From Auanema rhodensis (Eukaryota; Animalia; Nematoda): DNA of 64,000 bases. Where the stretch lies: positions 12,710,001 through 12,774,000 of the forward strand of contig OZ059900.1 in NCBI GenBank assembly GCA_964057225.1. Reading direction: 5' to 3'. The notes under the pieces are model-generated. The model did no database searches, had not been told where the DNA came from, and was given only the letters and a program-made list of their open reading frames with translations. Made by a program: the position numbers and the translations under genes. Positions within the stretch are counted from its first letter, which is position 1. Each line of letters opens with the position of its first letter. Below, in pieces: positions 48,676 to 63,597 of this stretch.

Positions 48676-51224
48676 AAAGGAATATTTATTGTATTAGTTC
48701 ATAAAATGTTTCATCAGAAAACTACTTATATCATAATGCAAAATAAAGAAAACCTCCAGTTTTATTTGTAACAAGTTCTGTTATTACAAAGTTTTTTAAA
48801 TAGGAAAAGCTGTGTATATCATAATCAGTGCACTATATTTATGAATATTCGAATGATTGAAAGTATTCGCATAAACCCAAATGTAGAATTTAGCGTTCAT
48901 TGGTCATTGCGTGAAAACAGGTCTTAAACAGCAATACATTGAAGAAAGAAAAGCAATGACAAATATAAAAAGTTTCTTTCTCAGATTATTCAAAGATTTT
49001 CTCTTCTTTTTGATGTTAAAAGGCTTAAAACAAAATTTATTCAAGTTGGGGGGTGAAACATAAAGAGTGCACTATATTGTTTGCTTCAACATTTAAAATT
49101 GTTTCAAATTATGGTTTTAAAAAAGGTTGCAAGCAAAAAAATTTAAGTAGCATTAGTTTTTTTCCAAGATTGTCGTTCTTAATTTAATGAAAATAGTAAT
49201 AATTCTGAAAAAAAATCATAGATGAACATGATTTCAGAGTTTTATATTAGCAATGGTCAAGTGTTTAATTAGTTATTACAACCGTATCTCTACAAATTTG
49301 TGACAGTCTTTTGATTTCGGAAACGAAACTGGAACAAGACGTTGCGCAACAAACTCACTTTCTAATATTAAGATAGAAACAGGATTGGTTAGTGTTTTCG
49401 ACGAAAACGCAGATAAGCAAAAGCCTACACTTCGCACAAGTAAGCACTTTCACTGCCTTTAGATTGAACATAATCTTTCAATGCAGTGTCCATGTCTTGC
49501 CAACAACTTTGTTCTATTTACAATCAATCAGTTATTCTGTAATAATACAATCTCGGATGTTATTTTTCATATATTACTGTGATTATACTTTGCCGAATTC
49601 AAGCATTTTTATTGTTTTTTTTACTCCTTGTTTAGCTTATACATCTGTAATTGTTTTCGAGTATTTGATATTAGATAAAAGTAAAATCTAAAAGATGAAT
49701 AACTATCTTTCAACACTGCCAAACATCCATCAAGTGCATCTTCAATTACATGAGCATTCAATTGACATTATCTTGACAAGGCTATATATTGAATTCGCTT
49801 AACTCAATTTCGAAATGTACACCGAATTCAGTAGTTTTTCTTTCTGTCTCATTTTATTTTTCAAAACTTTTTAATCCAATTTGGTGTCAACATAATTATG
49901 AAAAACGTTACCATAGTTTGTTGATAAATGCATTCTGTTTGTCTTATTCGAAAAAACTCAACAATTACTTTTTTGAAACTCAACAACTCTCTTCTTTTAC
50001 ATAAAATGTCAAAAGTTTAGGTTATTAAAAATGTGTTAATATGATACATTACATGATAACAGGGTGTATTGAATTACATGTTCTTTAATTGCTTGACCTA
50101 TTCTTTTAATAAGCATAACAGAGATGATTTATTTATACATTATAATTGTTATAACAGTTTTAATATCTTATACTATGTGTTAATATTCTAAAATTTTTTT
50201 TTCATATTCGCAAAAGATCTGGTTTTTTTAGTGAAAAAAATATGCTTATATATATTTAAATTTATTTCACTGTCCATGCTTCTGCTATAGCCACAAAATA
50301 CTTAGAAGTAACTTGTTGTTTATTCCTTTCAACTTTGATAGCGTGACATTTTCTTGCATAAATTAAAAAGATGAAGTATGTTCAATACGAATGGATACTG
50401 TAACAGCATGAATGCTATAAATGCCTTTTATTATAAGCAATTATTATTATCTGCATGTAACAGCTGTCCATCATCTCGTCAGCACTAGCAGTTGGTCCTA
50501 TATTTTTTCTTTGAGTTTTTTTAATATTATGTATTAAGTATTATCAAATTTGTGTTTAATTTGAAATTCCTTTTCTTCAAAACTCTCATTCAAATTTCAA
50601 CTTTTGATTTCATGATACCTATCAGTGAGAATAGAGTAAAATGAACTCTTTTTTAAGCAGCCATTCAACAACTCTTGTTATTTAGCTGATTTAGAAAACG
50701 TTCATATTGCAACATTTTTTTTTGCTTCAGAAAAACTATGGAGAAGAATTTCAGATTTCTTATAGAAATGCATTATCAAGATAATTTTGTTTTTTCATTT
50801 AGGGGGAAGAAATACCTATCAATATCCGGAAATGTGCATGTCTCAACGTCTAAGTTATATATGTCAATATCCATTATCTTTTTGTTGAATTGCATGCATG
50901 AAACCATTAAGATCTCAAGCCATTAGACTGATTCTTTATACATTCGCAATACTTTTTACCTGAATAACGGATGTAGCACATTATGAGTATCCATTAGCCG
51001 TTTTCACTTATGATGATAATAATGACTTAGAAACGCAATTCTTGCCATCTTAGAAAGGGAGAGAGTTAGGCGAAATGACATCTGGACCTTTTAGCATATT
51101 TACCGGGCAGAGTGTATATTAGCTTGAAAAGATTATGCAAAACAGACGCTGGCAGGAAGGGATATAGTCAAAGAAAGCTATAACATATAAAGAGTTGTTA
51201 ATGCGGGCATAGTTAGATAGTCTA

Positions 51225-51335
51225 CACAAGAGAACAGTGAGAGAGAACGAGAGAAAGAGAAAGAAAGAGAAAAAGCAAAAAGAGTACTAATAAGAGAGAG
51301 AGAGAGAGAAAGAGAGGGAGGAGAAGAAAAAGAAT
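51225..51335. repeat. (GA)n purine-rich tract upstream of egl-13
   Basis: Directly visible; possible GAGA-type promoter element. Confidence 0.8.
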
Positions 51336-51985
51336 AATGTTGTGTAGAGAACCAAACTTATTATGAGAACGATCGGAGACTAGCACACTTAAAAAGGTGT
51401 AGATGTAGAAAAATAGAATCAACATTTTCTCGTATGTGCTACCGTAGTTCATAACAAACTCACATGCAAATGTAGTTTACTCGGGTTTTCTATGAAATCG
51501 TCTTTACTATAATTAACATATTTTATATTGTTAATACTACTGTTAAATCTCATTTAATGTGTTATATCTTTTTTATTTTCAAATCAGTATAGGATACATT
51601 ACAAATATTTTTGAGACGAATTGTCTCCTATTTGAAATATAGCAATTTGACTCGATGATATGTTATTGATATCTGCTCTCATAAAGAAATTTGAATCCAC
51701 CTTACATTATTTATTTTTCCAGTAGCATCTTTCTTACTTACTGATTTTAAACTAAATATTTCTTATGGCATTCTACTCTTTTCTTCCATATAACTTGAAG
51801 ATGCATTTTTATCAATTTGAAATATTATTTTCAACATAGCACAGTAATAACAATGATTTCAATGTTATAGAGATTCTCGTTATGCTGAAATAGTTTTATA
51901 GTACTGATTGATTTCAAATGCAACTTTTAGGTGACTAGTGCCCGTTTGCTTCTTTATCGTATTGTTACTTATTTCCTTCCAATTT

Positions 51986-54362
<2,377 letters not shown>

Positions 54363-57300
54363 TGTTATAATAAACGAGAAGCAGCTGGTACCAATTGCTG
54401 GTGGGAACGAAACATGACACACCGCAAGCTTTTCAAATTTGTGTAAAGAATTACCTAATTATATTTTACATATACCTAACCTCAAAAAAGTTGAAGTAGA
54501 ACACCTCCTCAAAAAAGTATTTCATTCCTTCATATTTAATCTCATTATTACATACTATTAATTATTATTATATAACGCTATTTATTTATATGAATTTGAG
54601 AGAAAACTGAATATTTCAATGTACTTCGTTAATTCAGCATTGTATAATGTATTTATAACAATAACAAAACGCACAATGTTAAAATTACCGCATAATATAT
54701 GAGAATCAATTAATTATAAGATATTGCAATATTACAACGAAATGAAATGAAATAAGGTGAAAAAAGTTTTGATTTTTAAAATAATTTCTAAAAGTAATTA
54801 GTTAAAATGAGACAGCAAAGAAAAAACAATAATCGTTCTTCAGTTGTTTGGAATATCACTCTTCAAAAAGAAAGAGTTCTTTCAATTCTTTGATCTATTT
54901 ATTTAAATCTAACTTAAACTATTTTTTGAACAAGAATAACGTATGAAATGAGTGTAATTCAAGCATTCTCAATGAATTTCATATTTCCATTCATTTCACT
55001 GATTTGAAAAGCATCCAAAAACGTTAGACACAGTAGGGAAAAATTATCTGGTACCAGAATGAAATCTGATACTACTGATAAAATTCTCTCACACTCCTGG
55101 AAGCAAATACAGCTAATCTTTTGTTTAAATTCCACTAAAAGATTTATTGATTTAAACTACGATTCTAATTATTTTTAACTAAAAATTTTAATATGCAGTT
55201 ATGTACTATGATCGTAATTGCAACATCACCGAATAATTGCAATTGTGAGCAATACTTTCTTGTGGTAGTATGAATTCGTACAGCAATTATCTAAATCAAG
55301 CTGATTCTTTAATCGTTTGTTTGTAATTAGCTGGATTTACGCATCCTTTTATTTGGAATATTATATGTAATGCTTCTCAATATTTCAAAAGGCACCAACT
55401 GCAATTTTCAGCTTTATTAAATTCCCTTTTCGGTTTTATCTCAGATACTTTCACTAAAGCTCAATTATTATTTTTATTTAATTGATACTTGGAGACAGTG
55501 AATGTTTCAATATTTTGATCACATTTATAACTCTTTGAAATATCTAGATAGATCGTTTTCATAGTTTTAGGTTGTTGAAACCATTGTGTATTAACCAGCT
55601 GATACATAGTTCATACTTGTCTTAACCGTTGTTGATAAGTAGTTTATTTTGAAACGTTTTTCTCAATCTCACGGTGAAAACAATTTTAGTATCTATACAA
55701 ATAAATATTAAGAATAACTGTCAGCAACATCAATGATTTGAATCTATATCCATTTTTTATATGTCTCTGTTGCGAAGTTAAAGTGATATTATTATTAATT
55801 TAGTTCGAGGATAAGTTTTTTAGTATTTCATTTGTTTAACGTTTCACTTCAACATGTATTTGAAATCAAAATTAAGTGCAAGTATAGAGTTGATAGATTT
55901 CAAGCTTTAAGTAACTCCATAAGATCTCAAGCGTCATCTACACAACAAAAAAAGCTTATACTGAAAGCATTAGTATTTTTCAGTGGCCATTCTTTACAAT
56001 TTGTCTCTCTCTTTGACCAATAATCTATCAATTCCGTTTTCTTCATGCTGGGCTGTGTTGTCGCAAATTGGGTTTCAATTGAAGATCAAAGACAGATGAA
56101 AATGATGTTAAGTTAGAATAGAGGACGTACAAGTGAGTAAGAAGTTGTGAGTAGCTTCATTTCATTTTGTGACTTATGTCGCCAGCTAATCTTAGATAAC
56201 CTTCCTTGTCTCTTCTTCTTTAAAAGTTATTGATTCCTAACTGGAATAGAGGCAACTTATTCTTTCACATTAGCCGAATTTTACGGATTTGATTTAAGTT
56301 ATGCTCTAATGGCAATTACCCAAATTATCTGTAAAAATATTGGGAGTGATCAAAAGCATTTTTTGATTCATACTATGCTCAGTACATTATAGCTATCACT
56401 TGTTTGATTTTGATATATTTTTTGAATTTTAGAATAAAGGTGTAAAAATGAACCTATCTCTCCAAATGCAAAGCATTCACTATTATGTAATTATGCAAAT
56501 TTAAGCTTCTATCATAGAAGCAGATTTCCATTTTTTGCACTCCCATTTGAAGAAATTTCTTGAACATAATTAAAAATCATTACAAAAATGAATGTTCAAA
56601 AGAGAATAACTTAATTATGGAAAAATAAGATTTTTTCAAATAGATAAACCAAATTCATTTATTTATTTCAACAGAATGATTTATGATAATATTATTAAAG
56701 AAACAAAATGTCACCTCTTATACTCTATTCACTAACTATTTCTATATATCAAAACGCCTTTCTTATCTTATATAAAGTTTTCAACTCCTACATATAAATT
56801 TTCGGTTCTGCATCTCTCCCGTACATAACATTTCGTCTCCACTTATTCTTCATCTTCATCTGCTTTCACATACCCGTCTAACCTCATCTACTCATCTTAA
56901 CCCCGTGGCATATCCTCCGGCCTTCCCACAATTGACATACCATGATCGTATTAGCTTCAATGTGATTTGCGCTGGGTGCTTCCTTCCAGTTCATCTGTTC
57001 GCCCTCAACACGTTGCAAAACTTAAATTTAGTCAATTTCTTTGTGTTCGCTATAACAAACTTTATTTTCTTATATGTTGTGTCTTAAACAATTTGCATGC
57101 TCAAGTGTTTCCAGTATCGACATTTGATATTCAGGCACATCAACTTGTGAAGGAAAATGAGCATAACAACCCATTTTGAAAACAGAGCAGGTCATTGATC
57201 GGAATTTCTTATAACTTGACATTGAGAGAAAATCCCTCACACAAAATACATTCTATATATATATATTTATATATATATAATTATTTATTTATATAGCATC

Positions 57301-57487
57301 TATATTTATATTTTCTCCAAAGTCATTTTTAAGAAAAAAGAAAACTGTACTGAATATTCTGATTATCCGCTTTCTTGCTTGCATTAACGGTTGAGGCTGC
57401 TTGCTTGTTTCTCACTTTAAGACAGATTCGTGCTTCCACACAAAGAAAAACAGAAAAGATAAAAATCAGGGAAAGATTGGCTATGCC

Positions 57488-60400
57488 ATGCCGACAACTT
57501 GCGGATTTCCGAATTGTAAATTTCGATCAAGGTATCGTGGGCAAGAAGATAATAGACACTTTTACCGTATTCCCAAACGACCTCATATATTACGTCAGAG
57601 CTGGCTACAAGCTATTGGAAGAACCGAAGAGACAGTTGTATCACAGGTGCAGTTTACCAGAAATTCTTTGGAAATCGTGTTTTTTAAACTGTGGCTTTTT
57701 GCTTATAGCTTTGCATGGCAGTTCAACTTTCTATTTCAATTAATATTTTTTTAAACATGAAGAGCCTATTTTCATTATATTATTGGCAGTTTTTATAGTT
57801 GAGAATATGTTCGGCTCATTTCATGGGAGGCGAAAAAAAAGAAGGAGATGTACCTGTTCCTGATCCAACAGTGCGAAATCATATTGAAGAAATACTATGC
57901 TGTTAATTTTATTTTTTAGATTGATAAACAAATAAACATCGAACTTCCACCAAAGGAAAGCAAAAACTCCGAAAGACGCCGAGCTAAATGTAGGTTATGA
58001 AAAATGTTCTGTTTAATTGTTTTCATAAGATAACATAAAATTCCGTTCTATTGATTAGCTTCGTTTCTCGAAAAACCTATATGCGTATTCAAAATAATTA
58101 GCCTAATCTATGGCAGCTGCTCTCCTATGTCTGATTTGCTGTTGCCTTTCCACCGCTTAATGCAGTACAATTAAAGCGCCATATTATTCTGAAGTTGATA
58201 TGCTTAGAGTAGTCTCAGTTATTCATGGATCTCGAGGTTGCTGCGAAAAGAGTGAACTCACATTGGATCTCAATGAAAGTGGAGCCATCCCTATGTAATA
58301 GGGGTCAATTCAATTGACGTTCATGATATTCATAGCACATAAAGTCATTTAGACAGCAATATCTTTCCAAGCAGTCTTCTTGAAAACACATTCACTCAAC
58401 GAAATTGGAGCGGTTGAGCAAATGAGTTTTGACATGAGACCGTTCAAAGAATGATTATAATAAAAATATCTCTCAGTTTTTTCCTCTCATACGAGTGAAC
58501 ATGCATGCAAAATAACAAATCGTATACAAATTAGAATTCAATCAAAAGGTACATAGATTTGTTTTTATATTCCAAATTTCATAACATATCTTCAAAAATA
58601 AGCCTAATTTAAATCTATTAGGATCAGATAAGATAATTTTTGATTTAATATCTCTATTCTTTAACACGAACTCAGAAATAAATTGTATATACTGCTTGCT
58701 TCAGAAGAATTGCAATATTTAATTATATATCTTTGTTTTCGAGTTGTGGTTAGAACAGGAAAATAACAAAAAAAAAGATTGAAGTTTTTATAGATGTTTC
58801 TTTGATTAAAGTATAAAACTTTTAAAATATAATCTTCATAATAATTATTACAATATGATATCATAGCTTACCGCATAGTAAAATAGTGTTTTTCGATTTC
58901 AATTAAAAAATTCTTTATTCTGCACTTTAACTACAAGAAATAATGATAAGCAATATTATTTTAGCTATATCGGACGTTTTGAATCGGTTAGCACGCAACA
59001 ACTACTATGTTCCTAGTTAGTTTTTTATCACTCTATGAACAAAAAATTAATAGATTTTCTCTAAAATTCTACGAATCTTGTTTATTTTACAGTTTTTTTT
59101 CAGATATGCCAAATATTCTTAAAAATTTGGGTGCATCTAAGAAACAACATAATAACTGTGGACCTCTGGTGAACATCGATGGTCTTGCCATAATAGCTGT
59201 AATTGGTGCAGAACAATCGATAGTTGAAGAATCTGTTCTTCAGAATTCACGAATAAAGTTCAATAAACAAACCGTAAGATATTCCATAGGAACAAAAATT
59301 TATAAAAATTTAAGTGGGGTCATTTGCGAGTTCAGGCGTTTAATTTTCAATCAGATATTGATATATCTGAAGAGGTAAACGATTATGCGTTGATTTACTT
59401 CATTTTAAATGTTAATATTCAAGGTTATTGAACAAACTTCGGCTATTATCTTAATCTCTGAGGGGCCATTTCGTCTCACACGTGAGACTATCCAAAAGTT
59501 CAAAAATCTTCAAATTGTGGTAAAAACAAATCAAAAATATGATAACATCGATGTGAGCGCTGCAACTGAAAAGGGTATGTTTTATCAGCTCTATGAAATA
59601 TATTCTGTACTCATAACGTTATTAATGGTTTCTATTTCACATTCTCATAGAATTTTAAAATTTCGAATCATACCATAAGATAAAAAAAAGTAATGAGAAG
59701 GATTTTAGGTATTCTTGTATCTACAGTATCAATAGATTCTACAAATGAAATAGCAGACACCACTATGACTATGATACTAGAGTTGAACCGTCGCGTAATG
59801 TATTTCAATAATAGAATGCAAAGAGGGGAGAAGGTAAACACTGTTTTAAAATCATAATTTTTCCTATCGTTGCGTATCTTTTTCTAATTATGTTCAAACA
59901 CTGTTATAGAAACCTTGGGTCTTGTGTATTTGTCAATAAACAGTACATCTTTTTAGGTTTTAACGTATGAACACCTGGGTAGAATAGGATATGGCATGAG
60001 ACCTTTGCAAGGACAACAACTTGGACTAATAGGCTTTAACAGAATTTCATTAGCTGTGGCCCAAAGAGCTAGATGTTTTGGAATAAACGTTGTGTATTGG
60101 GACCCGTATGAGAAGGATACAAAAGAAATAACTAGGTATTCACCAGTTACCATTATATGTTTATATTATTTTAAACGGATAGCCCTCATGTTTATTACAA
60201 CTTGGAATATTACAGAATATCTGTATTAACTGATTTGTTCGAGACATGTGATATAATATCTCTTCATTGCGGGCTTGATGCAGCAACTAAATTTATAATC
60301 AACAACAATAATCTCGAACATTGTAAGCTGGGTGCGATTATTATTAATACCAGCCACGGTCAACTGATAAATGAGGTAGCTTTTAAAACTATTTTAACAA

Positions 60401-62173
60401 TTCATATAAATGTGAACCTAAATTAATTTCTTCGTGTTTAAGTTTTAAAAAATTATATTAACTAATTTTTGAAAACCATTAAAAATCAATGGTTTAGAAA
60501 CATTTGAATAAATATATCGAAAATGGACGTATATTGGGAGCAGCCTTAGACGTTCACGAAAGCAAGTTGTTCGAGCTCGACTCACACAACAGTATGTTTC
60601 TATATAGTTATTATTTGATCTTATTCAATTGGAAAACATGAATATCTTCAATTTTTTATTCTTCTAGATCATTTCAATATTGGTAGAAATGTCATTCAAA
60701 CTCCTCAAATGGCCTGGTATACCGAAAGTGGCGCTAAAGAATTAAGGCGGTTAGCGGTAGAAGAAGTAAGGCTTAATTCAAATTAGAAAAATTAGTACAA
60801 GGTTTCGTTAGTTTCTGAAAAAGTTATAGTGTTGAATACTAACAATTTTTTCAAATAGTAGTTTTTCAAAATATCAACTAAATGTTTTGCAGGTAATTAA
60901 ATGTTTGCTTGGTGAGCCGCTCCAATATTGTATAAACCGACAAGATATAGAGCAAGCACTTTGCCCTTCGGTTCAAAACAGCAGCTCTGCATCTTCAGCC
61001 AATAGTCATAACCTAAATTTAGAACCGACACAGACTAACCTTATCGTGGCGCAGATTTGGCAACAGATTGCGTTTAACCAGCTAACTTCTGCTGCCAATA
61101 ATATACAATCTATAATCCCATCGCAAGGACCATCTGTACCGATACCGGCAAACGCGAACACACCAGCGTTAGGGTCACAGTTTAATCCTTTATTCTCTAA
61201 CTCTTTTCTCACTATGGAACAAATCCAGCAGGCTCAAATATTATGTAAGTTAATAAAAAGATGTTCATTACCAAGTCTTATAAAAAACATCCGATTTAAA
61301 TTATTGTCAAGGACTAAAAAGCTTATTGAAAAATGAAAACTCCAACTTCTAAGCTATAATATCTCATTATATTATTTTTTCAGTATTTTCTTGGAAATTC
61401 ACTTTTGAACAGACATAATATCATGTTTATCTAACTTACTTTCTTTAATCCCTGTTATTTTTATCATCATTCCAGATGCGCAAATATTTTTGCGGGAAAA
61501 TCAACGGGTTCAGCAAGAACAATCAAAGCGACAGCGTCAACTACAACATGCTCAGAAAACTAAATACGCTCGCGAAAACAAGAAAACTTTCACGGATTCG
61601 TTGGCAATGTTGACCACAATGAACACTAGCCTCAGTAACATTAACAAATTGGATTCCGCTCAAAGCATGTTAGCATCTCTGAGGTAAAAATTAAATGAGT
61701 ACTTGTATTGAGTTTTTAACACTTTTTAAGCTCACAAATAAGTCATCCGTCATCGACACCATCACCTATTACACAGCAACTTCCAAGTCCACCTATAAAT
61801 ACCAGTCAGGTTGGCTTAAAGCACAATAATACTCTAATTTTTATTTTTATGAAACCATTCAGAAAGACTCGATAAACCTGAGTGTAGAGCAATTACAAGA
61901 TATGCAGATGGAAATAACCAGTGACTGTAACGACATTAAATCAACCGAATCATCTTCAAATTGTCTTGCACCCACAGATCTTCAATCGATTCATGATGAC
62001 TCGTCCTCAAATCAATCAATGCCAGTATTTTTCAGACAGATCCTGACTGAAACACTCAATGCAGTTGCTGCAAAGGAAAAGTATAGCTCATCTCAGTATA
62101 TCATTCATCTTTAATAAATTTCAGTTCAACTGAAGGAGAACCGTCTAACGTCACTAACTACGACTCTTCTTAG
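57488..62173 (+). CDS. ctbp-1: THAP-domain CtBP co-repressor with a degenerate dehydrogenase-like domain
   Basis: THAP MPTTCGFPNCKFRSRYRGQEDNRHFYRIPKRP...LRICSAHF joins in phase 1 to the exon at 59104. D2-HDH motifs follow (YDNIDVSAATEKGI, CDIISLHC, IINTSHG, GAALDVHE, AWYTE), then a Q/S-rich tail. Confidence 0.9.
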
Positions 62174-63597
62174 AAAAAGATCAAATCAAACAATATTTGA
62201 GAAGAACTGAACATATAGCACAAGGATTGGTTGAACATATGTGGAACAACGCAGTTATAACTATTGAAAATCAATATCATACCATATATTCCACAAAGTA
62301 TAGCATTCAACAACAAATCTTACTGATCTTTTCCATGCAAATATGATATCGGTAAAACATTTTGAATTAATAGTAAAACAATTACTTTTTTACCTCAACT
62401 TTATTTTTCCAGTTGCTTTTTTTTCAATAAATAAAAGGGCAATAATGACTTGATTTAATTTTTAAGTTTTTATATTACTTTTACTGTTTAATATTGTATT
62501 TTTAATTGTATTGCTTATATTCCAGTTTTCAACCATCTTTTCTTTTATTTCCACATTTGGACCTACTTTTGTTTCATAACTGTATAAGATTTTTTTGATT
62601 CAAGTTGACTAGTGCATTTTTTTATTTATTCCTAAATTCTCATGTTTTTCGAATGATTCTTGAAGTATTTTTTTTTAAAAGTTCAACTGAATAATATACG
62701 TGTGGATCGCTCCAAAAACGTATATATATAGATGTTGTAGCATTTTAAAAAAATTGAAAATGCCTCTTTACTTATATTTTTTATAGAAAACCACGTATAC
62801 CTGAAAGCGTGTGCTATTAAATTGTCATAGTTTGCAAAAATTTTATTCAAGTTTACGCATACTTCAAAACATTTTTGCCAAACTGAGGAACTCTTTTCTC
62901 AATATTTGTTTCTGACATTAAATATTAAACTGGTAGAAAGGCTTAAAAAGCTCTACTAGCCTATGTAATATCTGTTTGATATTATTTCATATTTTTCTAA
63001 TTAAAACCAAAATTCGAAAATTTTCCAATTATTTATCAATTTTTTTTATTCCACGCTGTAATATGGTTTTCATATTTTTATTATTAACAACGTTGATATG
63101 TTCTCCAAGTATATATTCAATAAAAGATTGTGCGTTGTGAAATAAATTATAATATTACATAATATGAAGTTTATTATATGTTTTATTATTTTTGGCTAAG
63201 AAATTCCTAGAAAAAATGTAGATAATACTTGTACTATCGATTCTTAACATATTTCTGCAGTTCAAAATACAAAAGTTGTGCGGGTAACAAGACTCGCATG
63301 AGCAGATGAGTAAAAGGTCAAGCGCTGACCGCGTCGCGTCCGCCTGCATTGCGTTGTAATCAATGCGCGCACAGCACAGAGGCCTACCAACGCGTTATTT
63401 GAAAATCGACTAGTGTAATCATAATTTTTTTTTCGAATAGCATTAATTTCTTAATTTTTATATCCTTACGATGATTAGCACCATTGCTATATATAAATTT
63501 GATTTAAATATTTCTTTCAATGTCTTATCATTAGTTGTAATATGAGTTTTGAATAGGTAGTATTAGTTCAGTTCTTTTTCAGAATGCTTTTAAGTTT

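What the first reader, a model, noticed from the sequence alone, without database searches (positions are those of the whole stretch)
59104..60950. CtBP appears to be a pseudo-enzyme: NAD(H) motif, catalytic His and PXDLS cleft eroded while the fused THAP stays conserved
Seen in sequence: the Rossmann motif reads GLIGFNRIS (60023-60049) rather than GxxGxGRxG, so the human CtBP1 G183 and G186 equivalents are N and S. The catalytic-His segment reads TPQMAW (60700-60717) rather than TPHxAW. RIGSG(F)DNID reads KTNQKYDNID. The N-terminal cleft (RPLVALLDGRDC...VAFCDAQSTQEIHE) is barely recognisable (AIIAVIGAEQSI...AFNFQSDIDISEE). Oligomerisation residues seem retained (RR in LNRRV, W in AWY). Recalled: C. 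elegans CTBP-1 keeps GxGxxG, the His and the cleft, and already shares NTSH, so that last change is not novel. The THAP domain here is almost identical to C. elegans. Inference: a redox-blind, DNA-tethered CtBP that targets chromatin through its own THAP domain rather than through PXDLS partners.
Basis: partly seen in the sequence, partly recalled or inferred. Interest (0 to 1): 0.8.

Follow-up and report, generated by a model that had tools for sequence, protein, structure and literature searches.

The report
Roundworm CtBP with an eroded core
A roundworm gene joins a well-conserved DNA-binding finger (THAP) to a CtBP co-repressor body that has lost its enzyme residues, a key cofactor-pocket glycine and its partner-docking groove, making it a natural test of which CtBP features are dispensable.

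Summary
Spliced RNA contigs from four runs match a 17-exon, 764-aa, in-frame THAP-CtBP gene (57488-62173, + strand) letter for letter.

- **NAD fingerprint:** it reads G-F-N-R-I-S, so human G183 and G186 are N and S.
- **Catalytic triad:** all three residues are replaced (R266H, E295K, H315Q).
- **Substrate loop and N-terminal groove:** the loop RIGSG reads KTNQK. The N-terminal PXDLS-groove segment keeps 10 of 50 residues, against 37-49 in the complete sequences of about 45 other nematode species.
- **Rate contrast:** the THAP part is 83-89% identical to other nematodes, a normal rate. The core is 33-42% identical, with a tree branch of 5.14 against a median of 0.069.
- **Descent:** six core introns are shared with C. 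remanei ctbp-1, so the core descends from ctbp-1.

- Loss of the catalytic His or Arg is common in nematodes and is not special here.
- G183N and the groove loss are unique among the nematodes sampled.
- The NAD-binding domain is otherwise well kept (32 of 38 ultra-conserved positions), so "redox-blind" is plausible but unproven.
- Oligomer residues are only partly kept.
- Parasitic flatworms hold a parallel class: conserved THAP with an eroded CtBP core.

I could not test whether a second, canonical ctbp exists in this genome. The scan has only a sibling note on this same window (s1-421196), none on other DNA.

The parts
57488..57646 (+). Exon 1: start codon and first part of the THAP zinc finger (C5, C10)
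   Evidence: Pfam THAP. 49/53 identical to PDB 2JM3, the C. elegans CTBP-1 THAP. RNA joint 57646>57799. The intron position is shared with C. remanei.
57799..57870 (+). Exon 2: second part of THAP (C-x2-H, PVPDP box)
   Evidence: RNA joints. Same 72-nt exon size and intron phase as C. remanei ctbp-1. Alignment.
57920..57989 (+). Exon 3: conserved linker (DKQI-IELPPKESK)
   Evidence: RNA joints. The linker is of the clade V type.
58965..59015 (+). Exon 4: 51-nt microexon that keeps THAP in frame with the core
   Evidence: Joint 57989>58965 is listed with side 51. Joint 59015>59104 is not listed but follows from the arithmetic of the 2817-nt contig: 72+70+51+170+60 = 423 nt between the mapped pieces. 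GT..AG borders.
59104..59273 (+). Exon 5: N-terminal strand and eroded PXDLS-groove segment. An ATG at 59106 directly follows a TTTTCAG acceptor.
   Evidence: No Pfam hit. Alignment to RPLVALLDGRDC...ILKDVAT keeps few residues.
59315..59374 (+). Exon 6: rest of the groove segment (WGHLRVQAFNFQSDIDISEE).
   Evidence: RNA joints 59273>59315 and 59374>59424. The 11-residue insert relative to all other CtBPs lies at the exon 5/6 border.
59424..59574 (+). Exon 7: substrate-binding domain. The substrate loop reads KTNQKYDNID instead of RIGSGFDNID.
   Evidence: Pfam 2-Hacid_dh, 27.8 bits. R97K, I98T, G99N, S100Q, G101K.
59709..59833 (+). Exon 8: helix carrying the retained R141 and R142 (LNRRV)
   Evidence: Alignment, site table. 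Same 125-nt exon as in C. remanei.
59957..60135 (+). Exon 9: Rossmann beta-alpha-beta.
   Evidence: Pfam 2-Hacid_dh_C, 35.9 bits. PDB alignment to CtBP1/2. 53/53 nematode sequences and 145/150 best family hits have Gly at the second position, and none has Asn.
60216..60375 (+). Exon 10: SLHCGL (H236 and C237 kept) and NTSHG (R266H)
   Evidence: Pfam 2-Hacid_dh_C, 49.3 bits. Alignment. Site table.
60498..60591 (+). Exon 11: GAALDVHESK (D290 kept, E295K)
   Evidence: Alignment. Site table.
60668..60765 (+). Exon 12: TPQMAW at 60700-60717 (H315Q, W318 kept)
   Evidence: PDB alignment to CtBP TPHTAW. Same 98-nt exon as in C. remanei.
60893..62173 (+). Exons 13-17 (60893-61244, 61476-61683, 61731-61809, 61863-62080, 62125-62173 with TAG): end of the core (CINRQD) and a lineage-specific, Q/N/S-rich C-terminal tail of about 270 residues
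   Evidence: All joints appear in the RNA contigs. The reading frame is open to 62173. No Pfam family above threshold.

Best explanation
This is a real, transcribed, intact descendant of the nematode ctbp-1 gene from a clade V (Rhabditina) worm.

The THAP DNA-binding domain has stayed under normal purifying selection. The dehydrogenase-like body has evolved roughly 70 times faster than in any other sampled CtBP.

**What the body has lost**
- The whole catalytic triad and the substrate loop, so it is certainly not an enzyme.
- The otherwise invariant N-terminal segment that forms the PXDLS-docking groove, so canonical recruitment by PXDLS transcription factors is very probably lost.
- The second and third glycine of the GxGxxG dinucleotide fingerprint. 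G183 is the site of the laboratory NADH-insensitive G183A mutant, so NAD(H) binding is probably weakened or lost.

**What it has kept**
- Most of the NAD-domain scaffold, which also makes the dimer interface.

**Inferred working mode**
The protein is brought to DNA by its own THAP finger. This mode is shown to exist for C. elegans CTBP-1a. The remaining body and the new C-terminal tail would serve as a scaffold or oligomerisation and effector part, not as a redox-sensing, partner-docked co-repressor.

**Shown here:** gene structure, expression, the substitutions, the rate contrast, and descent from ctbp-1.
**Inferred:** loss of NAD(H) and PXDLS binding, and THAP-only targeting.
**Unknown:** whether it is the species' only ctbp.
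For: - **Gene and expression.** RNA contigs give 16 GT..AG introns and zero mismatches. One 2817-nt contig spans THAP to the 3' UTR. The ORF is open for 764 codons.
- **Family.** Pfam THAP, 2-Hacid_dh and 2-Hacid_dh_C hit the separate exons.
- **Substitutions.** They are mapped on human CtBP numbering, with anchors D204, R266, H315 and W318 checked.
- **Ultra-conserved positions.** Of 101 positions at least 95% conserved in 38 other CtBPs, this protein keeps 54. Every other sequence tested keeps 91-99%.
- **Where the losses fall.** They concentrate in the substrate-binding/groove domain (22/63 kept) and not in the NAD domain (32/38 kept; Fisher p = 1.4e-6).
- **Rate contrast.** THAP plus linker is 83-89% identical to other nematodes, the same as C. 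remanei against them. The core is 33-42% identical, against 60-69% among distant nematodes. The core end branch is 5.14 against a median of 0.069. The THAP end branch is 0.08 against 0.024.
- **Descent.** Eight intron positions and phases are shared with C. remanei ctbp-1, six of them in the core.
- **Uniqueness.** G183 is Gly in 53/53 nematode sequences, and the N-terminal segment is 37-49/50 identical to vertebrate in the complete ones, against 10/50 here. An exhaustive phmmer of exon 9 over 1.84 billion representatives found no closer relative and no Asn at this site.
- **Literature.** The triad is H315/E295/R266 and the fingerprint is GXGXXG(17x)D; H315Q is the catalytic-dead laboratory mutant (PMC5536941). 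G183A is NADH-insensitive (PMC11822463). In C. elegans, CTBP-1a rescue needs THAP C5/C10 but not the groove alanine (bioRxiv 10.1101/2020.06.09.143248).
Against: - Nine of eleven recalled NAD-contact residues and 84% of ultra-conserved NAD-domain positions are kept. That is what one would expect if a nucleotide is still bound.
- No binding was measured or modelled.
- The alignment of the groove alanine (A52) is ambiguous: MAFFT gives Q, but a one-residue shift gives A-F matched to A-F.
- Changed conserved positions show no bias towards conservative replacement, so continued selection on the fold is argued only from the open frame, the splicing and the Pfam matches.
- No close relative is available, so no dN/dS test could be run.
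- A canonical second ctbp may exist. Flatworms seem to have a canonical CtBP plus a degenerate THAP form.
Confidence: 0.6

Rival explanations
1. It is the fast-evolving copy of a duplicated ctbp-1. A second, canonical, possibly THAP-less ctbp elsewhere in the genome carries the NAD(H)- and PXDLS-dependent co-repressor role. This copy has specialised on the THAP-dependent role, so its body was freed to drift (isoform subfunctionalisation).
For: - Asymmetric divergence after duplication is the commonest cause of such long branches (general knowledge).
- Neodermatan flatworms hold THAP proteins with the same eroded core. The CtBP survey reports flatworm CtBPs with an intact triad, which implies two genes there.
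- Another first-stage note claims a CtBP docking motif in a different gene of this genome (s1-421176, unchecked).
Against: - None of the roughly 45 nematode species in the searches showed two ctbp genes.
- No second copy or alternative canonical exons lie in this 64-kb window.
- First-stage notes on about 2080 windows of this genome mention no other ctbp; this is weak evidence.
- The adjacent egl-13-like gene shows no P-x-[DN]-L-[ST] motif in any + frame. A canonical partner groove in the same animal would be expected to keep that motif.
Confidence: 0.35
2. The body still binds NAD(H), or another nucleotide-like ligand such as acyl-CoA, through a non-canonical loop. It would then remain a ligand-regulated oligomer, and only catalysis and PXDLS docking are lost.
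For: - D204, R184, H236, C237, T264, D290 and W318 are all kept. The NAD domain keeps 32/38 ultra-conserved positions, against 22/63 in the other domain.
- The third fingerprint position tolerates Ala in Strongyloididae and C. briggsae.
Against: - The second fingerprint glycine is Gly in 53/53 nematode CtBPs and in 145/150 of the nearest family members, and is never Asn.
- Even G183A makes human CtBP1 NADH-insensitive.
- The conserved NAD-domain positions could equally be kept for the dimer interface.
Confidence: 0.3
3. It is a decaying, functionless gene remnant that happens still to be transcribed.
For: An extreme branch length and a shift towards AT-rich codon amino acids in the core (FYMINK 0.32 against 0.19-0.24 in orthologues).
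Against: - A 764-codon frame stays open across 17 exons in a 30% G+C genome.
- All splice sites are intact and used in four RNA samples.
- THAP is under normal constraint.
- The NAD-domain core is selectively kept.
Confidence: 0.03
4. Assembly, annotation or alignment artefact.
For: None found.
Against: RNA contigs of four samples are identical to the genome over all exons. The motifs align unambiguously to solved CtBP structures.
Confidence: 0.01

Closest known systems
C. elegans CTBP-1a (F49E10.5; THAP-CtBP, Nicholas et al. 2008; THAP structure PDB 2JM3)
   Same: Same architecture (THAP, linker, 2-hydroxyacid-dehydrogenase-like body, long tail). Eight shared intron positions with C. remanei ctbp-1. 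THAP exon 1 is 49/53 identical. R266 is already His.
   Different: C. elegans keeps GCGRVG, H315, the substrate loop and an N-terminal groove segment 48/50 identical to vertebrates. This protein has GFNRIS, Q315, KTNQK and 10/50. Core identity is only 35%.
THAP-CtBP-like proteins of parasitic flatworms (e.g. Echinococcus/Taenia 'Zinc finger C2CH type' / 'C-terminal-binding protein 1', Schistosoma THAP-type proteins)
   Same: The same syndrome. THAP is 72-82% identical to the nematode one. The body has lost the triad, and the groove segment is 6-12/50. The fingerprint is hit at the same places: cestodes have G183D and schistosomes G186S. Pfam often no longer detects the dehydrogenase domains.
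   Different: A different phylum, so the erosion is independent. The flatworm forms probably coexist with a canonical CtBP. No paper describing them was found.
Nematode CtBPs with a decayed catalytic triad (Strongyloididae, Panagrolaimidae, Heteroderidae, Bursaphelenchus, Aphelenchoides, C. bovis, C. auriculariae, Elegans-group Caenorhabditis)
   Same: They have lost one to three triad residues. Globodera and Heterodera share H315Q, and the Elegans group shares R266H. The literature notes only that nematodes lost one of the three (PMC9907507).
   Different: All of them keep G181, G183, D204 and the N-terminal groove segment (37-49/50). They are dead enzymes but canonical NAD-fingerprint, groove-bearing CtBPs.
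Human CtBP1 laboratory mutants G183A (NADH-insensitive), H315Q (catalytic-dead), A52E/V66R (PXDLS-groove-dead)
   Same: Natural substitutions fall at the same sites: G183N, H315Q and possibly A52Q.
   Different: The laboratory mutants are single changes in an otherwise canonical protein. Here 47 of 101 ultra-conserved positions differ.
Plant ANGUSTIFOLIA (CtBP homologue lacking catalytic residues)
   Same: A CtBP-like protein retained without the dehydrogenase triad (PMC9907507).
   Different: It is not an orthologue of animal CtBP, is cytoplasmic, has no THAP domain and shows no repression in animal assays.

Membership tests
Animal CtBP (C-terminal binding protein) | D-2-hydroxyacid-dehydrogenase-like body (Pfam 2-Hacid_dh + 2-Hacid_dh_C) | tested here: met
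   The exons hit PF00389 (27.8 bits) and PF02826 (35.9, 49.3 and 13.8 bits). A profile built from the other CtBP cores scores the protein at 260 bits.
Animal CtBP (C-terminal binding protein) | Descent from the ctbp gene (orthology or paralogy) | tested here: met
   Six core and two THAP intron positions and phases are shared with C. remanei ctbp-1. The tree places it inside clade V CtBPs with 97/96 support, though on a long branch.
Animal CtBP (C-terminal binding protein) | GxGxxG(17x)D NAD(H) fingerprint | tested here: not met
   It reads G-F-N-R-I-S, with D204 kept. All 53 other nematode sequences have G at 181 and 183.
Animal CtBP (C-terminal binding protein) | Arg-Glu-His catalytic triad (R266, E295, H315) | tested here: not met
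   It has H, K and Q. The triad is also incomplete in many accepted nematode CtBPs, so this feature is not strictly defining.
Animal CtBP (C-terminal binding protein) | Conserved N-terminal PXDLS-groove segment (RPLVALLDGRDC...VAFCDAQST.EIHEKVLNEA) | tested here: not met
   10/50 identical to vertebrate, against 37-49/50 in the complete sequences of other nematodes. It also carries an 11-residue insert.
Animal CtBP (C-terminal binding protein) | Actual binding of NAD(H) and of PXDLS peptides, and NAD-dependent oligomerisation | not testable with these tools
   This needs protein biochemistry. Folding of the joined protein was left out because no reference exists for it.
Animal CtBP (C-terminal binding protein) | Long C-terminal tail with the conserved central block | tested here: inconclusive
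   A tail of about 270 residues is present, with no alignable block except a possible FNP motif. Nematode tails are known to be lineage-specific.
THAP-domain CtBP subgroup (CTBP-1a type) | N-terminal C2CH THAP zinc finger fused in frame | tested here: met
   C5, C10 and C57-x2-H60 are present. Pfam THAP. 92% identical to 2JM3. The in-frame fusion is carried on a single RNA contig.

The most novel reading that the evidence does not exclude
This is the species' only ctbp. A free-living-type clade V nematode would then have dismantled the canonical CtBP mechanism (NAD(H) sensing and PXDLS docking) while keeping the THAP-tethered protein. In step, the neighbouring partner gene egl-13 would have lost its otherwise mouse-to-worm invariant PLNLS docking motif. 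That would be a natural knockout of the PXDLS co-repressor network, and it would show that the ancient THAP-CtBP form can work without it. Parasitic flatworms reached the same state independently.
Probability: 0.3. Interest if true: 0.75.

Novelty: new variant of a known kind. Interest (0 to 1): 0.55.

Why it matters
CtBP is the textbook example of a co-repressor built from an enzyme fold. It is thought to read the cell's NADH level and to be recruited through PXDLS motifs. The latest survey states that the core is highly conserved across Bilateria and that change is focused on the tail.

This case, together with the flatworm class found alongside it, shows that the core can be dismantled when a THAP DNA-binding finger is attached. 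It offers natural variants for asking which CtBP properties (catalysis, nucleotide binding, groove, oligomerisation) are needed for THAP-dependent repression.

The comparative by-product is also useful. Across about 45 nematode species the catalytic triad decays freely, while the NAD fingerprint and the groove stay invariant. This argues that nucleotide binding and docking, not catalysis, are what selection normally keeps.

Tried and rejected
- **Close relatives.** An exhaustive phmmer with exon 9 found none. The top two hits were misassembled sturgeon CtBPs with internal repeats. The window's own protein is not in the collections, so there is no protein id, no dN/dS test and no dating of the substitutions.
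- **Microsynteny.** C. remanei ctbp-1 has no SOX gene within 10 kb, so this is uninformative for orthology.
- **Possible canonical paralogue.** The Logan fragment P0003 (a canonical exon 9 followed by an intron) was checked. Its contig has 41% G+C against 30% here and no DNA match to the window. It comes from another worm.
- **Fold-preserving bias.** Hydrophobic and polar conserved positions are kept equally (27/50 against 27/51), and the mean BLOSUM62 score of the changes is about 0. This gives no support either way.
- **C-terminal tail.** Pfam gives only a sub-threshold HeLo match, taken as chance.
- **Swapped-in dehydrogenase.** The idea that a different dehydrogenase replaced the CtBP body is rejected by the shared introns.
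- **Scan notebook.** Searches for THAP, corepressor, dehydrogenase and pseudoenzyme found no second ctbp. This is weak negative evidence.
- **Handling of the joined protein.** It was built only inside scripts from window.fa, for local alignments and trees. It was never typed or sent to a search or folding tool.


Full report
**Gene and expression**

The region lies in a genome stretch of about 30% G+C. Reading it exon by exon gave a clean GT..AG model.

Four public runs of one study hold spliced contigs that lie on the locus with no differing letter. They carry 15 listed GT..AG joints, and one more joint was not shown. Depth is zero in the large intron. One 2817-nt contig runs from 57298 to 62440.

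The joints corrected the model in two places:
- Exon 6 begins at 59315, which adds WGHLRVQ.
- A 51-nt microexon (58965-59015) lies between the THAP linker and the first body exon at 59104.

The unlisted joint 59015>59104 follows from the contig's own arithmetic: 72+70+51+170+60 = 423 nt between its mapped pieces.

The result is 17 exons and a 764-codon open frame ending at TAG 62171-62173, with THAP in frame with the CtBP body. Sequence error, wrong exons and silence are therefore excluded.

**The observation**

Pfam finds THAP in exon 1, 2-Hacid_dh in exon 7 and 2-Hacid_dh_C in exons 9-11.

- phmmer against solved structures aligns GLIGFNRISLAVA to CtBP2 GLIGFGRTGQAVA.
- It aligns NVIQTPQMAWYTE to NLICTPHTAWYSE.
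- I used a vertebrate CtBP1 row as ruler. Its offset was checked at D204, R266, H315 and W318.
- On that ruler the protein has G183N, G186S, R266H, E295K and H315Q.
- The substrate loop has R97K, I98T, G99N, S100Q and G101K.
- Between residues 28 and 77 only 10 of 50 residues match, and there is an 11-residue insert.
- Kept residues are R141, R142, R184, D204, P205, H236, C237, T264, D290 and W318.
- R163, R171 and G210 (= CtBP2 G216) are replaced at their aligned columns, and L215 (= CtBP2 L221) falls in a 4-residue deletion. An Arg lies one residue away from each of R163 and R171.
- THAP exon 1 is 49/53 identical to the C. elegans CTBP-1 THAP structure 2JM3.

**Relatives**

An exhaustive phmmer of exon 9 over 1.84 billion cluster representatives found nothing closer than ordinary CtBPs (45 bits, 42-52% identity). 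The two higher scores were sturgeon misassemblies with repeated segments. The window's own protein is not in the collections.

A word search seeded with an alignment of two nematode CtBPs and the window's exons by reference returned named nematode CtBPs.

A search restricted to the THAP part of C. remanei CTBP-1 returned every THAP-CtBP regardless of the state of its body. It added clade I, II and IV nematodes. It also showed that the fusion exists in echinoderms, a hemichordate, an annelid, Macrostomum and parasitic flatworms.

**How unusual it is**

- Of 101 positions at least 95% conserved in 38 other CtBPs, this protein keeps 54. The other sequences tested keep 91-99%.
- THAP plus linker (residues 1-100) is 83-89% identical to Caenorhabditis, Mesorhabditis, Ascaris, Steinernema and Acrobeloides. 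That equals the distance of C. remanei to the same species.
- The core is 33-42% identical to any CtBP, against 60-69% among distant nematodes.
- In a maximum-likelihood tree of cores it sits inside the clade V group (97/96) on an end branch of 5.14 changes per site. The median is 0.069.
- On THAP alone its branch is 0.08 against a median of 0.024.
- A 36-taxon THAP-plus-linker tree makes it sister to C. remanei (97/93).
- The core's amino-acid make-up is shifted towards AT-rich codons, while THAP's is not.

**Descent of the body**

I derived the exact exon structure of C. remanei ctbp-1 from its locus and protein. Eight intron positions with the same phase are shared. Two are in THAP and six are in the body, at human positions 66, 114, 156, 219, 302 and 335.

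The body is therefore a diverged ctbp-1 body and not a different dehydrogenase fused to THAP. No second CtBP-like copy or alternative canonical exon lies in the 64-kb window.

**What is and is not special** (54 nematode rows, about 45 species)

- G181 and G183 are Gly in 53 of 53 sequences.
- G186 is Gly in 48 and Ala in 5 (Strongyloididae and C. briggsae).
- D204 is kept in 52.
- The groove segment is 37-49/50 identical to vertebrate wherever it is complete.

The triad, by contrast, decays freely:
- H315 is Arg in Panagrolaimidae, Bursaphelenchus, C. auriculariae and C. bovis.
- H315 is Asn in Strongyloididae, Gln in Globodera and Heterodera, and Gly in Aphelenchoides.
- R266 and E295 are lost in many lineages, including the Elegans group (H and V).

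The literature notes only that nematodes lost one triad residue, and that the nematode core is about 60% conserved (PMC9907507).

G183N, the substrate-loop change and the groove loss are unique among them. Among the 150 nearest family members to exon 9 in the whole library, 145 have Gly at the second fingerprint position and none has Asn.

**A parallel class**

Neodermatan flatworm THAP proteins keep a THAP domain 72-82% identical to the nematode one. Their bodies have lost the triad and the groove segment (6-12/50). The fingerprint is hit at the same sites: cestodes have G-L-D-x-I-G and schistosomes G-L-G-P-I-S. Pfam often sees only THAP.

The CtBP survey reports an intact triad in all non-nematode bilaterians it sampled. 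Flatworms therefore probably have a canonical CtBP as well. I found no paper describing the degenerate THAP class.

**Pattern of erosion and the NAD question**

The losses are not uniform. The substrate-binding/groove domain keeps 22 of 63 ultra-conserved positions. The NAD domain keeps 32 of 38 (Fisher p = 1.4e-6; domain borders recalled). Nine of eleven recalled NAD-contact residues are kept.

G183A alone makes human CtBP1 NADH-insensitive (PMC11822463), and H315Q is the standard catalytic-dead mutant with little effect on repression (PMC5536941).

My estimates are:
- Loss of catalysis is certain.
- Loss of canonical PXDLS docking is very likely, at about 0.75. The one caveat is that the key alanine can be aligned either to Q or, with a one-residue shift, to A.
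- Loss of NAD(H) binding is probable but open, at about 0.55.

**Mechanism**

In C. elegans, CTBP-1a rescue of SMDD axon defects needs the THAP zinc ligands C5 and C10. It is unaffected by the groove mutation A203E, and THAP alone achieves it partly (bioRxiv 10.1101/2020.06.09.143248). A THAP-dependent, groove-independent mode therefore exists in a relative.

The best reading is that this protein has been reduced to that mode. The retained NAD-domain scaffold and the new tail would serve as a scaffold or effector.

CTBP-1 also binds EGL-13 through EGL-13's PLNLS motif (PMC8816384). Here the upstream neighbour is an egl-13-like SOX gene with an HMG box at 53.6-54.1 kb. No + frame of 51.0-55.5 kb contains a P-x-[DN]-L-[ST] motif, or a looser version of it inside an open stretch. 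This agrees with the sibling first-stage note s1-421196 and argues mildly against a canonical partner groove in this animal. I could not align it to an EGL-13 orthologue.

**Limits**

- Whether a second, canonical ctbp exists elsewhere in the genome could not be tested. Only weak negatives come from the scan's notes.
- No sister-species sequence was available for selection tests.
- It was assembled only inside scripts from window.fa for local alignments and trees.

**Verdict**

This is a new, extreme variant of a known family, with an undescribed parallel in flatworms. Interest is moderate.

Noticed in passing
window 52500-54200 (+), HMG box ORF 53587-53883 and 53887-54135: The upstream neighbour is an egl-13-like SOX5/6 gene. 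No P-x-[DN]-L-[ST] motif occurs in any + frame of 51000-55500, although C. elegans EGL-13 has PLNLS there for CTBP-1 binding. A possible remnant, TPLLAN, lies near 53460. The gene model was not built and no orthologue was aligned.
   Followed up: partly
proteins P0272-P0290, P0320, P0008, P0163: The catalytic triad of nematode CtBPs has decayed repeatedly and independently (H315 to R, N, Q or G; R266 to H, S, D, E or A; E295 to many residues). The NAD fingerprint, D204 and the PXDLS-groove segment stay invariant. This goes well beyond the published remark that nematodes lost one triad residue.
   Followed up: partly
proteins P0281-P0319: The THAP-CtBP fusion is not nematode-specific. It also occurs in echinoderms (Acanthaster, Anneissia), a hemichordate (Glandiceps), an annelid (Lamellibrachia), Macrostomum and parasitic flatworms, with a strikingly conserved THAP start (MPTTCGFPNCKFRSRY). 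In Neodermata the attached CtBP body is eroded (cestodes G183D, schistosomes G186S).
   Followed up: partly
window 58965-59015 and 59104: A 51-nt microexon joins THAP to the body. The next exon starts AT-ATG directly after a TTTTCAG acceptor. That is a plausible trans-splice or alternative start for a THAP-less isoform like C. elegans CTBP-1b. The contigs cannot show this.
   Followed up: no
proteins P0001, P0002, P0159 (Acipenser sinensis, 'UNVERIFIED_CONTAM'): These database CtBP entries contain internally repeated segments (misassemblies). They top phmmer lists through summed multi-stretch scores.
   Followed up: yes
beyond the window's end (note s1-378930): A first-stage note reports a homogeneous satellite of more than 57 kb starting about 4 kb past this window. 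I did not look at it.
   Followed up: no
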